A stretch of DNA of 64,000 nucleotides, taken from Adineta vaga. Lineage: Eukaryota; Animalia; Rotifera. Each line of letters opens with the position of its first letter. Within the stretch, counting starts at the first letter, position 1. Positions 16,101-19,853 of this stretch are shown here, piece by piece. The notes beneath the pieces were generated by a model. It ran no database searches, was not told the DNA's origin, and saw only the letters and a list, made by a program, of their open reading frames with translations. Where the stretch lies: assembly GCA_021613535.1 (NCBI GenBank), contig CP075492.1, positions 12,524,001 to 12,588,000 of the forward strand, given 5' to 3'. Made by a program: the position numbers and the translations under genes.

Positions 16101-17826
16101 GCAGGTGATCAAATTCTTCGTGTTGATCGAATTAATTTTATTGATATGACGCAAGAAAAGTAACGATAAGAAACATTCTAGATTTGACATTTCCTTGTTT
16201 TTATGCATTAGAGCTGTCGAAATTCTTAAACAGTGTGGTGATTCAATTACATTACAAATACTTAAAGATGCAGCAAATCGTCATGGTCTCTCTACCATAC
16301 TTGATCCACCAACTGAAATTCAACAAGAATTTACACGTTTTCCTTCACCATTGAGTTCTTCGGTGATATCAAATCAACCAGCACCTTCTACAAATTCATT
16401 ACAAACATTGAACATCTATGAATCCCTGTTGCCTGTTCAACAACCACTGCCAGTACAACCATCAACTAGTTATACAACAGAACCTTATCAATCAACCTCA
16501 GGACTCGCCTATTCAAAACAGTGCAATAATCATCAGAGAAATACTGAATCAGGAAATTTCATTCGTTCAACTAATCGAACACAATCATTTATGACTCGAA
16601 GTACATCTGCAACTCGACCAGTCATTCGTCGAGAAGATATTCCACCAGATCAGAATGAAAACTATCGCGTAAAATCTGTTATTGCACCAAACATGTTATC
16701 GAAACCAATGGTTCGTTCAAGTGCATTCACAAGACAAGCAAACCTAGTATATTATTTTTTATTCTAAAATCTTTACAAGACTTTTCACATTTAGATACAT
16801 GGTACTGATGTTGTAAATCATCTATCATCACCTATGAAGTGAGTTCATCGTCATCTTTTCATCCTCACATATCTGAATAGCAACTTGAAAATTTTTTGAT
16901 TGGGAAGGGATATTTTAGAAGAGTAGGAAAAGTTCTTTACGACATCTCTTGTCCTTTGATTTTGAATGGCTCTTCCGAAATGACGTAATTGTTTCGTTCA
17001 CAAACTGACCTTGAAGTGTTTTCGATTCAGTTATTCTCATTACCTTCGAAAGTATTGTGTATATTCACCAACTGATATTTTCATGTCCTTGAAATTTAAA
17101 GAATAGACGATTAGTCAAACCCAGCTGGCGATATTTTTCAGTCGAAAAAATCTAAATGCATCTATTTTTTTTTCTTTTCATTCGAAGAAAACAACAAGAA
17201 CCAATCAAATTAATTAATACATATCGAACTAATCTGAAGGATATCCGTCGAAAACGTATTGATGATTTATTAACTAAGATTCATCGAACAGAAAATGAAG
17301 AGAAAGAACTAAAGTATATGATTCATCATTTTACATCTTCTAATAAGTTATATAATTCTTTGACGTAGTGATTTACAACTAGATGATGAATTTGATCATC
17401 GTGTCGGTGAATTTTACTCGCAAACTAATAATAGACAAGTAAGTATATGACAATAATCCATTTTTTGTTTACATAGATCTATCTTTTCTAGACTTCAACT
17501 TCGTTAGCCAATGATCTGGATGACGAGTAAACCCTCGAATTATTTCTTCTACTCCTTGATAAGATGCCTTTTTTTAAATATATTTTAGATTACGACGTCG
17601 TTTGAAACAATTTGAAAAAGATCGTGAAGCTGAACGAGCTGATATCAATCGGTTATTAGCTAAACGTGAAGCACATTTGCATAAGGATCAAATCGTATCA
17701 AATATCCAAGAATATGATTCTCCACCTGATTCCAATCTTAATGATTTTAAAACTCGTCGAATGTGTGAAGAAGATCGCCGAATTGAACAGACAAGTTTAC
17801 CGAAATATTTACTAAGATTTCAATGA
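13187..17826 (+). CDS. Afadin/canoe-like protein (RA, FHA, DIL, PDZ, C-terminal coiled coil)
   Basis: [23 protein letters not shown] (afadin RA2-like); HCIIEN...[11 protein letters not shown] (FHA); [16 protein letters not shown]...WAQKQGLE (DIL); SFGISIV...[19 protein letters not shown] (PDZ). Confidence 0.85.
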
Positions 17827-17975
17827 ACTTTTAAATATTTAGTAGAACTTATTTTGATGAAAGAATCATCAATAATATTCTTTTTTCTTCTTGTTTGTCT
17901 CTTGAGAAAAATAAATCTTTGTATTTTCTTTTTCTTCTAATTTCTCAGATATACATCCTTTTTTTCGTTCATATA

Positions 17976-19451
17976 ATGGCAATGATAAATGATTGTGATC
18001 ACAATTTACTTGTTTGGATTGATTTGGAAATGAGTGGATTGGATTTAAATATTCATACAATTGTGGAAATAGCGATAGCAATCACTGATTTTCATTTAAA
18101 AAATTTTATTGAAGGTTCGATTGTTTTCTTTTCTTTTCTTTTCATTGAGGAACAAAAAGCGAACGATTGCAATTTGTATATGATTTTCTATCAGGTCCAG
18201 ACATTGTTATTCATCATGAACAGAATGTTTTGGATCGAATGAATGATTGGTCAAGAGAACAACATACAAAATCAGGATTAATTGATTTGATTCGAAAAAG
18301 TCAAGTCTCGTTGCATGATGCTGAAACAATGGTGTTAGATTTTCTAAAACAATATTGTCAAATCGGTAGTGGTATTCTTGCAGGAAATTCAGTGTTTGTC
18401 GATCGATGGTGAGATTTATTACTACATAGTTTTTCAAGATGTTAATGAATAAGACTTTGAATTGTATATTTAGTGTCAGAATTTATCTTTCGAGAAACAA
18501 TCATCTTCGCTTATGAAATAACACTTCTTTTTACAATTCATTTTAGGTTTATTGAAAAATACATGCCACGCCTTAATGCCATTCTTCATCCAAGTATTGT
18601 TGATTGTAAGTGCATATTCACACCTTCTTCTTTGTTCCAAATAACTTACTATATAGGATCATTTTTGTTTTCAAGGTAGTACTCTCAAAGAATTAACCTT
18701 ACGTTGGCAACCAATACGATATACGAAACGACCTCATAAACAAATGATGCATCGTGCACGTGATGATATTAAAGAATCTATTAATGAACTTAATCATTAT
18801 CGACAACAGTAATATCCACATTGTTCTTTTTCTTGCTTCTCTAATACATGCAATCAATGTGTTTCTTTTTCTAGTAATTTTTATCTTGGTTGGCATGCTC
18901 TTCGATATCCTCCATATATTGCAGCACCTACTCTTTCAAATCCTCGTACTCATTTAGTCTGGCTAAAAACTGATACTGATCAAATTAATCATGTCTATGT
19001 GATAATTACTGATGGAAATTTAAATCTTTTAAATGAACTTTATCTTGATATGAATAACAAATGCAATCAATATTCTTTATTAGTTGGTTTTTTACATAGA
19101 AATATTTTAGTTAATCGATGTTCACCAATTTGTGGTCAACGTGTTCATATTGATCGAGCAAGACTTGAACGTGTTGCACCAGAATTTCTCGCTTGTTGTC
19201 ATTATCGTAGTATTGATGTCGATGTTTTAAATGTTCTTTGTCGACGATGGGCTAAACAAGTTTATGAAAGTCGACCGTAAATTGATTTTTTTCAAATATA
19301 CATCTCATCTACTAATTTCTATTTTCTTTTTAGAATGATACAAATAGATTCGAATGATCTAGTTGCAGAACTGAAAGGATCAATTCAATTGTTGCAATAT
19401 TATCGTGCAAATATATTTAAATCGGATCTTTTTGTACAACAAAAGAAATAA
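17976..19451 (+). CDS. REXO2: Oligoribonuclease (Orn/REXO2 family) with a second, degenerate Orn domain fused C-terminally
   Basis: Domain 1: LVWIDLEMSGLD, MNDWSREQHTKSGL, LAGNSVFVDR, STLKEL..RW, HRARDDIKES. Frame continues via a phase-2 intron into LVWLKTD...ITDGNLN...CGQRVHIDR...HYRSIDV...CRRW...SIQLLQYYRANIF. Confidence 0.85.
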
Positions 19452-19853
19452 TAAAATAAAGAGAATGTGCATATTATACGAAGGACGATAAAGAATGTGT
19501 TGATGACCGAGAGATAAAATAAAATGCGAGAATGAAGAATGTATTTATAAAGTACAATATCTAGTATTCGATAAGACATTGACTTACCAATGCTGTTCTA
19601 TCATAAAAGGGAGAGAGAGAGAGAGAGAGAAATGGTAAGAACCATTACCATCATTCTATCTATATCATAAAGTTATTATAAAATGACAAGAGTAGAGAGA
19701 TGAAAAAAAGGTAAGGAATAAAATGTATTACGTATGTATTGCCAAGACAAATAATGGTTTTGAATGATAAAAATCTTTTATGAACTGTTGCTTGATCAAA
19801 TGCGCGCGCACATCAATTGACGATTATCTATTCGTTTAAAAGAAGTCTGATTG

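What the first reader, a model, noticed from the sequence alone, without database searches (positions are those of the whole stretch)
17976..19451. Single-chain pseudo-dimeric oligoribonuclease with reciprocal motif loss
Seen: one spliced frame encodes two Orn domains. Domain 1 keeps the DEDDh catalytic set (DLE, VDR, HRARDD) but has HPS where Orn/REXO2 has the conserved HYR. Domain 2 has lost DxE (LVWLKTD), lost HRAxxD and lacks the W..H helical segment, yet keeps HYRSIDV and RRW. Known: Orn/REXO2 works as a homodimer and, as I recall from published structures, the Tyr/Arg of HYR reach across the interface to cap the dinucleotide in the partner's active site. Inference: internal duplication followed by division of labour, giving one composite active site per chain and possibly altered specificity.
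Basis: partly seen in the sequence, partly recalled or inferred. Interest (0 to 1): 0.8.

Follow-up and report, generated by a model that had tools for sequence, protein, structure and literature searches.

The report
Single-chain two-domain oligoribonuclease in bdelloid rotifers
This rotifer gene fuses two copies of the normally homodimeric RNA-recycling enzyme oligoribonuclease into one chain, and each half has kept only the residues the other has lost, so the chain should carry one shared active site instead of two.

Summary

- **Gene model:** window 17976-19451 (+) holds a six-exon, all GT..AG gene for a 354-aa protein. It has two Orn/REXO2 domains joined by a 26-residue linker.
- **Organism:** the genome is Adineta vaga, a bdelloid rotifer.
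- **One chain:** a paralogue in the same genome (332 aa) encodes most of domain 1, the linker and domain 2 in a single uninterrupted exon. Two intronless mRNA-like contigs from a related bdelloid read straight through the domain junction. Rotaria orthologues (355 aa) align gap-free at 85% identity.
- **Domain 1:** keeps DxE, the L-wedge, the Trp lobe, GNSxxxD and HRAxxD in every species, but its HYR loop is degraded.
- **Domain 2:** has lost DxE, the lobe, Ser108 and the general-base His in every species, yet CHYRSIDVD is invariant and dN/dS is 0.18.
- **Why that fits:** published structures place His-Tyr-Arg in the partner's active site, and R130A kills the enzyme.
- **Salt bridge:** the R130-E139' pair is also kept on one side only.
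- **Model:** AlphaFold gives pLDDT 90.8 and pTM 0.88.
- **Distribution:** domain 2-type sequences were found only in bdelloid-type proteins. Pfam does not detect domain 2.
- **Untested:** interface geometry, enzyme activity and A. vaga RNA reads.

The parts
17976..18114 (+). Exon 1: start codon and domain 1 strand 1, with D16-x-E18 and the L-wedge (WIDLEMSGL at 18015-18041)
   Evidence: Pfam RNase_T matches this exon at E=4e-4. The motif is invariant in domain 1 of all species aligned.
18195..18408 (+). Exon 2: domain 1 lobe with W65/H70 (18239-18265) and AGNSVFVDR with S112 (Ser108 equivalent) and D116 (D112 equivalent) at 18380-18406
   Evidence: The own-genome search with this exon found the paralogue at 47% identity.
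18547..18605 (+). Exon 3: the degraded cap loop of domain 1, H132-P-S in place of H-Y-R (the motif block starts at 18587)
   Evidence: This position reads HPS, SKK, NRS, DRS, DQS or DAS across species.
18676..18808 (+). Exon 4: domain 1 S139/E143 (Orn S135/E139 equivalents), general base H163 and D168 (HRARDD at 18750-18767), and the start of the C-terminal helix
18809..18874 (+). Junction intron: 66 nt, phase 2, GTAATA..TAG. If it were retained, the frame stops at once (CAG TAA). It contains no AATAAA.
   Evidence: Rotaria sordida has an intron at the same position with the same in-frame TAA. The intron is absent from the mRNA-like contigs L012 and L024.
18875..19276 (+). Exon 5: the last residues of the domain 1 helix (N183-F184), the linker (18876-18953), and the domain 2 core. 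The core has LVWLKTD without DxE (18954-18980), no lobe, CGQRVHIDR (19131-19157) and the invariant HYRSIDVD...CRRW (19200-19250).
   Evidence: The match to REXO2 is E=1.3e-10.
19334..19451 (+). Exon 6: SNDLVAELKGS, where the general-base His is lost (19350-19382); the domain 2 C-terminal helix YYRANIFK (19398-19421); the stop codon at 19449-19451, overlapped by AATAAA at 19450

Best explanation
The gene encodes a single-chain pseudo-heterodimer of oligoribonuclease (Orn/REXO2), the DEDDh 3'-5' exonuclease that cleaves dinucleotides.

**Origin (inferred from the tree and shared features).** An ancestral bdelloid gene was duplicated in tandem and fused. The fused gene was then duplicated again, giving type A (about 330 aa) and type B (about 355 aa; this window).

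**Proposed mechanism (inferred).**
- The two halves pack against each other as the two protomers of the normal homodimer do.
- Domain 1 supplies the complete catalytic machinery: D16, E18, D116, H163, D168, the L22 wedge, the W65 lobe and S112.
- Domain 2 is catalytically dead. It supplies in trans the His291-Tyr292-Arg293 loop that stacks on the 5' base and caps the 5' phosphate in domain 1's site.
- The mirror-image site has been abandoned on both sides. Domain 2 has lost its catalytic residues and its lobe, and domain 1 has lost its Tyr/Arg.
- The result is one composite active site per chain.

**Shown here.**
- The one-chain architecture.
- The reciprocal and conserved motif pattern.
- Purifying selection on domain 2.
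- A confident two-domain model.

**Inferred.**
- Homodimer-like packing.
- Trans-completion of the active site.
- Dinuclease activity.
For: **Architecture.**
- The spliced model is open and uses canonical splice sites.
- It aligns gap-free over residues 1-354 at 85% identity to the 355-aa proteins of Rotaria sordida and R. socialis.
- The paralogue carries both domains in one exon.
- The intronless contigs L012 and L024 come from two samples. They have a 5'UTR, an AATAAA and a shared 3' end.

**Selection and origin.**
- Against the L012 coding sequence, dN/dS is 0.09 for domain 1 and 0.18 for domain 2.
- In the tree, the domain 1 rows of types A and B form one clade (97*) and the domain 2 rows form another (100*).

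**Motif pattern.**
- Domain 1 keeps DLEM, W, GNSxxVDR and HRAxDD in all 16 proteins aligned. Its HYR position varies freely.
- Domain 2 loses DxE, the lobe, Ser108 and the general-base His in all 16. CHYRS(I/V)D(I/V)D is invariant.
- Of the cross-interface salt bridge R130-E139' (PMC6768110), only domain 2 Arg plus domain 1 Glu survive. Both residues of the mirror pair are lost.
- The interface residues L140, W144 and the C-terminal Phe (Chu 2019) persist in both domains.

**Literature.**
- Tyr129/Arg130 act from the partner protomer.
- The Orn active site is composite.
- R130A abolishes activity without breaking the dimer. A domain 1 with Ser at that position therefore needs an Arg supplied in trans.

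**Structure.**
- AlphaFold2 of the orthologue P0048 gives mean pLDDT 90.8 and pTM 0.88 over 355 residues.
- Domain 1 superposes on REXO2 6n6j at 0.9 A.
- Domain 2 folded alone scores lower (pLDDT 77). It best matches REXO2 chains whose lobe is disordered (TM 0.8).

**Family score.** NF003765 (oligoribonuclease) scores 281 bits against a cut-off of 106.
Against: - No coordinates or PAE were available. I could not check that the model's packing is homodimer-like, or that Tyr292/Arg293 lie at domain 1's site.
- Position 135 of domain 2, a phosphate-cap Ser in Orn, is an invariant Asp. If that residue also acts in trans, the cap is not canonical.
- Chu 2019 assigns Tyr164 to the same protomer as the substrate and only Arg165 to the partner. 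This disagrees with Kim 2019 on the Tyr.
- Y129A in Colwellia Orn did not significantly change hydrolysis of the artificial substrate pNP-TMP (cited in PMC6768110).
- The tree is a quick search with SH-aLRT support only, and domain 2 sits on a long branch.
Confidence: 0.72

Rival explanations
1. There are two separate genes, or a functional first gene followed by a decaying pseudogene copy. Translation would stop at the TAA at 18810-18812, and domain 2 would be untranslated or made separately, for example from a trans-spliced downstream cistron.
For: An in-frame TAA follows the last domain 1 codon directly if the 66-nt intron is not removed. From my own knowledge, bdelloids use spliced-leader trans-splicing; this was not tested here.
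Against: - The paralogue has both domains in one exon.
- The mRNA-like contigs L012 and L024 are continuous across the junction.
- Domain 2 has no in-frame ATG, GTG or TTG before 18999 and no ATG before residue 233.
- There is no AATAAA after domain 1.
- dN/dS of domain 2 is 0.18.
- Residues N183-F184, encoded after the junction, complete domain 1's conserved C-terminal helix (YRxxxF).
Confidence: 0.03
2. The protein is one chain, but domain 2 is only a scaffold or a regulatory or targeting module. Domain 1 would work with an open, uncapped site, for example on longer oligonucleotides. Domain 2's HYR would then be conserved for structural reasons.
For: - Domain 2's cap position 135 is Asp rather than Ser.
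- Y129A had little effect on an artificial substrate in Colwellia Orn.
- The packing geometry was not verified.
Against: - The same loop varies freely in domain 1 (HPS, SKK, NRS, DRS, DQS, DAS) while it is invariant in domain 2. Fold stability alone therefore does not demand HYR.
- R130A abolishes Orn activity on both a 2-mer and a 7-mer.
- The one-sided retention of R130-E139' fits a contact directed from domain 2 to domain 1.
Confidence: 0.13
3. The reciprocal complementation is the same, but it happens between chains. Domain 1 of one chain would pair with domain 2 of another (head-to-tail dimers or higher oligomers), not within one chain.
For: Nothing here separates intra-chain from inter-chain pairing. 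Domain-swapped assemblies are common for tandem repeats of dimeric domains (general knowledge).
Against: - The AlphaFold2 monomer model packs both domains confidently in one chain, with pTM 0.88 and linker pLDDT 73-82.
- Both termini of Orn lie in the dimer interface (PMC6768110), so a linker of about 26 residues should suffice.
Confidence: 0.1

Closest known systems
Orn / REXO2 (oligoribonuclease, small fragment nuclease; NCBIfam NF003765; PDB 6N6A, 6N6I, 6J7Z, 2IGI)
   Same: - Domain 1 has the DnaQ fold: 0.9 A rmsd to 6n6j and 45% identity.
- Domain 1 also has the DEDDh set, the L-wedge, the Trp lobe and Ser108.
- Domain 2 has the same fold.
- The HYR loop, the interface residues and the C-terminal helix YYRxNIFK are present.
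   Different: - The canonical enzyme is a symmetric homodimer of about 180-aa chains with two composite sites.
- Here two diverged copies sit in one 354-aa chain, and only one site can be complete.
- Domain 2 lacks the lobe helices and four of the five catalytic residues.
- Domain 1 lacks Tyr129 and Arg130.
- Domain 2 has Asp at cap position 135.
Tandem Orn-Orn proteins with both domains intact (P0210/P0354/P0358/P0359 from transcript-sized metagenome contigs; Coemansia javaensis 'rna exonuclease' P0361, 383 aa)
   Same: Two Orn domains in one predicted chain, joined by a short linker.
   Different: - Both domains keep DxE, GNSxxxD, HYR and HRAxxD, so there is no division of labour.
- They are unrelated to the bdelloid fusion: the domain 2 profile scores them 112 bits or less, against 191-239 bits for the bdelloid types.
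- The Coemansia entry may be a merged gene model.
Single-chain pseudo-dimers or pseudo-oligomers that arose by duplication and fusion of a homo-oligomeric enzyme (herpesvirus monomeric dUTPase, pepsin versus retropepsin, the two RNase III domains of Dicer). Named from general knowledge, not tested here.
   Same: The same evolutionary logic applies. There is an internal duplication, each half loses redundant motif copies, and one active site is built from both halves.
   Different: - The folds and chemistries differ.
- I found no such case described for the DEDDh Orn family (literature searches).
NrnC (DEDDy dinuclease)
   Same: Its active site is also composite. A residue from the adjacent subunit (H205) completes the phosphate cap (PMC8492067).
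   Different: - It belongs to a different branch of the DnaQ fold (RNase D-like).
- It is octameric and symmetric, not a fused chain.

Membership tests
Orn/REXO2 (oligoribonuclease, NF003765) | Whole-protein score above the curated family cut-off | tested here: met
   - Orthologue P0048 (85% identical to the window protein) scores 281 bits, and paralogue P0001 scores 237 bits. The cut-off is 106 bits.
- Domain 2 alone scores 73 bits (type B) and 46 bits (type A), below the cut-off.
- The window's joined protein itself was not submitted.
Orn/REXO2 (oligoribonuclease, NF003765) | DEDDh catalytic residues (D12, E14, D112, H158, D163) | tested here: met
   - Domain 1 has D16, E18, D116, H163 and D168.
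- Domain 2 does not meet this feature. Only the D112 equivalent survives, and only in type B.
Orn/REXO2 (oligoribonuclease, NF003765) | Phosphate cap S108, Y129, R130, S135, plus the L18 wedge and the W61 lobe, all within every protomer | tested here: not met
   - Neither domain has the full set.
- Domain 1 has L, W, S108 and S135 but no Y129 or R130.
- Domain 2 has Y129 and R130 but no S108, no lobe, and Asp at position 135.
- The set is complete only as a composite of domain 1 and domain 2, apart from position 135 if that residue acts in trans.
Orn/REXO2 (oligoribonuclease, NF003765) | DnaQ/RNase H-like fold that superposes on solved Orn structures | tested here: met
   - Domain 1: TM 0.86-0.93 by target and rmsd 0.9 A.
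- Domain 2 folded alone: all top hits are Orn/REXO2, E=5e-10, TM up to 0.81 by target.
- Both tests used the models of orthologue P0048.
Orn/REXO2 (oligoribonuclease, NF003765) | Symmetric homodimer as the active unit | not testable with these tools
   - The sequence predicts that an asymmetric intramolecular pair replaces the homodimer.
- A pTM of 0.88 indicates a defined two-domain packing.
- No coordinates were available to compare with the homodimer.
Orn/REXO2 (oligoribonuclease, NF003765) | Dinucleotide-specific 3'-5' exonuclease activity | not testable with these tools
   This needs an enzyme assay.
Duplication-fusion pseudo-dimers with complementary motif loss (concept, not a curated family) | Two homologous domains in one translated chain | tested here: met
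Duplication-fusion pseudo-dimers with complementary motif loss (concept, not a curated family) | Complementary (reciprocal) loss of active-site elements, conserved across species | tested here: met
   The motif table covers 16 proteins of two paralogous types, together with the alignment.
Duplication-fusion pseudo-dimers with complementary motif loss (concept, not a curated family) | The two halves pack as the ancestral oligomer did and form one site | tested here: inconclusive
   - For: high pTM, retained interface residues, and the one-sided R130-E139' pair.
- Against a firm conclusion: the geometry was not inspected.

The most novel reading that the evidence does not exclude
The asymmetric enzyme is not just a single-chain copy of Orn. 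It has a re-specified active site.

- The cap supplied in trans carries an invariant Asp where every Orn has the phosphate-binding Ser135.
- Bdelloids keep two ancient paralogous versions of the fusion. They also keep three ankyrin-repeat-plus-Orn genes, and they have no plain REXO2.
- The tandem enzymes may therefore act on a different substrate class. Candidates are 5'-OH or modified dinucleotides, longer nanoRNA or nanoDNA, and linearised cyclic dinucleotides.
- This may be linked to the unusual nucleic-acid turnover that goes with bdelloid desiccation and repair biology.
Probability: 0.2. Interest if true: 0.75.

Novelty: new variant of a known kind. Interest (0 to 1): 0.62.

Why it matters
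**A natural half-site experiment.** Orn/REXO2 is treated as an obligate symmetric homodimer with two composite sites. Evolution has here removed one site and kept exactly the trans-acting residues of the other. This independently supports the structural claim that the His-Tyr-Arg loop completes the partner's active site.

**A clean evolutionary case.** Duplication, degeneration and complementation have acted across a dimer interface. Two paralogues that split before the sampled bdelloid genera diverged both preserve the pattern.

**Practical uses.**
- The protein offers a monomeric dinuclease scaffold in which catalytic and cap residues can be mutated independently. That is impossible in a homodimer.
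- It also flags an annotation gap. Pfam sees only one domain, and the proteins are labelled 'unnamed' or 'Exonuclease domain-containing'.

**An open question.** Bdelloids appear to lack a plain REXO2. Which of their five Orn-family genes serves mitochondria is unknown.

Tried and rejected
**Steps that failed or were left out.**
- **The joined 354-aa model.** It has no reference, so I did not type it or send it to any search, look-up or fold tool.
  - The exons were searched one by one, by reference.
  - The joined step was left out.
  - The model exists only inside scripts, built from window.fa coordinates. There it was used for local alignment and dN/dS.
  - The 85%-identical orthologue P0048 stood in for folding and family scans.

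**Readings I dropped.**
- **A nematode origin.** Neighbouring first-reader notes and the six contigs totalling about 100 Mb suggested a nematode. The 100% match to an Adineta vaga protein settled the organism.
- **Horizontal transfer from bacteria.** I considered this because the type B orthologue's nearest single-domain hits were metagenomic. In the tree, domain 1 sits in an unresolved eukaryotic polytomy and is not inside the bacterial group. The origin is left open.

**Searches that added little.**
- Pfam on single exons gave almost nothing.
- Pfam on domain 2 found no family.
- The ESM Atlas shape search found only single-domain matches.
- Literature searches found no earlier description. 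Searches were poorly targeted: 'pseudo' matched Pseudomonas.
- Earlier findings of this scan held nothing on Orn.
- dN/dS against the paralogue is saturated and uninformative.

**Tree rows left out.** The intron-retaining gene models P0018, P0003 and P0008, and most truncated metagenomic fragments.
Full report
**What is in the sequence.**
- Window 17976-19451 (+) holds a six-exon gene. The exons are 17976-18114, 18195-18408, 18547-18605, 18676-18808, 18875-19276 and 19334-19451.
- All five introns are GT..AG. The joined frame is open for 354 codons.
- An AATAAA overlaps the stop codon at 19450. There is none inside the gene.
- Residues 1-182 form a complete Orn/REXO2 domain. Residues 183-208 form a linker. 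Residues 209-354 form a second, degenerate Orn domain.
- The domain-2 exon alone matches human REXO2 chains at E=1.3e-10.

**Handling of the joined model.**
- The joined protein has no reference. I did not type it or send it to any search, look-up or fold tool, and that step was left out.
- The model was assembled only inside scripts from window.fa, for local alignment and dN/dS.

**Organism and relatives.**
- The assembly has 100.8 Mb in 6 contigs. The window is C3:12,524,001-12,588,000.
- A paralogue at C3:7.742 Mb (locus L002) is 100% identical to 'hypothetical protein I4U23_013190 [Adineta vaga]', 332 aa. The genome is therefore the bdelloid rotifer A. vaga.
- Locally, the joined model aligns without a gap over residues 1-354 at 85% identity to 355-aa proteins of Rotaria sordida (P0048) and R. 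socialis (P0049). It is 79% identical to P0121 and 55% identical to Didymodactylos carnosus P0122.
- I call this group type B. The paralogue group of about 330 aa, found in Adineta and Rotaria, is type A. It is 40-44% identical to the window protein.

**Is it one chain?** Five lines of evidence say yes.
1. The type A paralogue encodes domain 1 (from GPDLVIHH), the linker and domain 2 in one exon, L002:1499-2370, with no stop.
2. Contigs L012 and L024 come from two JGI samples and are 99.9% identical.
   - They carry the whole type B reading frame with none of the five introns.
   - L024 has a 52-nt 5'UTR.
   - Both contigs end at the same point shortly after an AATAAA, so they behave as mature mRNA.
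   - They read ...THYQQ-H-NFLLGWH... straight across the junction.
3. Rotaria sordida genomic DNA (L013) has introns at the same five positions. Its junction intron has the same CAG|TAA donor.
4. Domain 2 has no start codon of its own. The frame holds no ATG, GTG or TTG before 18999, and the first Met is residue 233.
5. Residues N183-F184, encoded after the junction, align with the conserved ...YRxxIF end of the REXO2 C-terminal helix. That helix contains the interface residue Phe215. A protein stopping at the TAA would lack it.

**Is domain 2 alive?**
- Against the L012 coding sequence, dN/dS is 0.09 for domain 1, 0.18 for domain 2 and 0.42 for the linker, with dS about 0.9-1.4.
- Domain 2 is therefore under purifying selection. 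It evolves about 1.6 times faster than domain 1 by tree path lengths.

**The reciprocal pattern.**

| Element (Orn numbering) | Domain 1, all 16 proteins | Domain 2, all 16 proteins |
|---|---|---|
| D12-x-E14 and L18 wedge | kept (W-[IL]-DLEM-x-GL) | lost |
| Lobe Trp (W61) | kept | whole lobe segment deleted |
| Ser108 / Asp112 | kept (GN[ST]Vx[VI]DR) | Ser108 lost; Asp112 kept in type B only |
| His128-Tyr129-Arg130 | degraded: HPS, SKK, NRS, DRS, DQS or DAS | invariant, within CHYR[SN][IV]D[IV]D |
| Position 135 (Ser in Orn) | Ser | invariant Asp |
| Glu139 | kept | hydrophobic residue |
| His158 / Asp163 | kept (HRAxDD) | general-base His lost |
| C-terminal helix | conserved Phe, encoded after the junction | YYRxxIF[KRQ] kept |

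- The reported inter-protomer salt bridge R130-E139' (PMC6768110) survives on one side only. Domain 2's Arg and domain 1's Glu are kept.
- Both residues of the mirror pair are lost: domain 1 has Ser or Lys at position 130 and domain 2 has Val, Leu, Ile or Thr at position 139.
- The interface residues named by Chu et al. (Leu175, Trp179 and Phe215 of REXO2) persist in both domains.

**What the literature says about the canonical enzyme.**
- Kim et al. 2019 (PMC6613908):
  - S108, R130, S135 and the Y129 hydroxyl cap the 5' phosphate.
- In the same paper, R130A abolishes activity as fully as DEDD mutants do, while the dimer stays intact.
- Piotrowski et al. 2019 (PMC6768110):
  - The loop His128'-Tyr129'-Arg130' belongs to the neighbouring monomer.
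  - Both termini lie in the interface.
- Lormand et al. 2021 (PMC8492067):
  - The Orn active site uses residues from two monomers.
  - The lobe helices La-Lc hold the 3' base.
- Chu et al. 2019 (PMC6521605) place Arg165 in the partner protomer but assign Tyr164 to the substrate's own protomer. This is a minor disagreement.
- Taken together, a domain 1 that lacks Tyr and Arg cannot work as a domain 1 homodimer. It needs exactly what domain 2 has kept.

**Structure.**
- AlphaFold2 of orthologue P0048 with a 70-sequence alignment gives mean pLDDT 90.8 and pTM 0.88. The linker scores 73-82. A pTM that high over 355 residues means a defined inter-domain packing.
- Domain 1 superposes on REXO2 6n6j at 0.9 A over 172 columns.
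- Domain 2 folded alone is less confident (pLDDT 77, pTM 0.74).
- Domain 2 finds only Orn/REXO2 structures. The best fits (TM about 0.8 by target) are to REXO2 chains whose lobe is disordered. That is the expected result for a lobe-less Orn fold.
- I could not read coordinates. Homodimer-like packing and the position of Tyr292/Arg293 remain inferred.

**Origin and distribution.**
- In a 66-row tree, the domain 1 rows of types A and B form one clade (97*). The domain 2 rows form another (100*, on a long stem).
- This implies one duplication-fusion followed by the split into types A and B (quick search with SH-aLRT support only; rows P0018, P0003 and P0008 left out). The shared lobe deletion and the shared motif states agree with it.
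- A domain 2 profile searched against 1.84 billion representative proteins gave the following:
  - Hits above 120 bits were only the type A and type B representatives and three fragments.
  - Next came P0210 (112 bits), a tandem of two intact Orn domains from transcript-sized contigs of an unknown eukaryote.
  - After that came P0211, a transposon-disrupted gene model.
  - Ordinary Orns scored 76 bits or less.
- All named carriers of types A and B are bdelloids: Adineta vaga, A. ricciae, A. steineri, several Rotaria species and Didymodactylos.
- Coemansia javaensis P0361 is also a tandem with both domains intact.
- Tandem Orns therefore exist elsewhere. The reciprocal-loss form was found only in bdelloids.
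- Pfam detects only domain 1. NCBIfam NF003765 scores the whole orthologue at 281 bits (cut-off 106) and domain 2 alone at 73 bits.
- I found no paper describing this arrangement.

**Other Orn genes in the genome.**
- A. vaga has three further single-domain Orn genes with a full or nearly full motif set. They lie at C4:14.51 Mb, C1:4.29 Mb (-) and C1:4.267 Mb (+).
- They are about 40% identical to animal REXO2 and sit on a long branch.
- The C4 copy and one C1 copy were checked upstream, and both have ankyrin-like sequence there (Ank_2 E=2e-4 on the C4 copy, below the Pfam cut-off).
- I saw no plain REXO2.

**Verdict.**
- This is a single-chain pseudo-heterodimeric oligoribonuclease with one composite active site.
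- I class it as a new variant of a known enzyme kind, apparently specific to bdelloids and not annotated as such.
- Packing geometry, enzyme activity and any change in specificity remain to be tested. The invariant Asp at cap position 135 is the main hint of a specificity change.

Noticed in passing
L002:1319-2370 (G000:C3, about 7,742,096-7,743,147): This is the type A paralogue of the tandem Orn, 332 aa, identical to the A. vaga protein I4U23_013190. It has only one intron, so most of domain 1, the linker and domain 2 lie in a single exon. Its domain 2 has also lost the D112 equivalent (GPIR).
   Followed up: yes
L015 (G000:C4:14509665-14510260, +), L016 (C1:4291991-4292620, -), L017 (C1:4266742-4267376, +): Three single-domain Orn-like genes carry DxE, GSSIHxDK, HYR, S135 and HRAMDD, though the lobe Trp is Arg in one C1 copy. 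They are about 40% identical to animal REXO2 and sit on a long branch. The C4 copy and one C1 copy have ankyrin-like sequence upstream in frame (Ank_2 E=2e-4 on the C4 copy, below the Pfam cut-off). The genome seems to hold no plain REXO2.
   Followed up: partly
window 19221-19223 (D298 of the joined model): Domain 2 has an invariant Asp at Orn position 135, where Orn has a phosphate-cap Ser. This holds in both paralogue types and in all species aligned, while domain 1 keeps the Ser. I could not settle from the papers' text whether Ser135 acts in cis or in trans.
   Followed up: partly
window 18807-18812; L013:3487-3492: The phase-2 donor of the junction intron reads CAG|TAA in both Adineta and Rotaria. 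Intron retention would therefore give a 182-aa protein with domain 1 only, lacking the conserved C-terminal Phe. This may simply follow from the GTAA donor consensus.
   Followed up: partly
P0210, P0354, P0358, P0359 (transcript-sized JGI/Logan contigs); P0361 (Coemansia javaensis): These are tandem Orn-Orn proteins in which both domains keep every catalytic and cap motif. They come from an unidentified eukaryote and from a kickxellomycete fungus. They look like independent fusions without division of labour; the fungal one could be a merged gene model.
   Followed up: partly
P0211 (768 aa, unnamed source): This Orn gene model is interrupted by a transposase-like insert of about 320 aa flanked by duplicated Orn sequence. 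It is probably a transposon insertion or an assembly or annotation artefact in some eukaryote.
   Followed up: no
window 17602-17826 and 17910: An upstream reading frame on the + strand ends at 17826, and an AATAAA lies at 17910. That leaves only about 65 nt between this signal and the Orn start codon, so the intergenic region is very compact.
   Followed up: no
window 19607-19630: A (GA)n microsatellite lies in the 3' flank of the gene.
   Followed up: no
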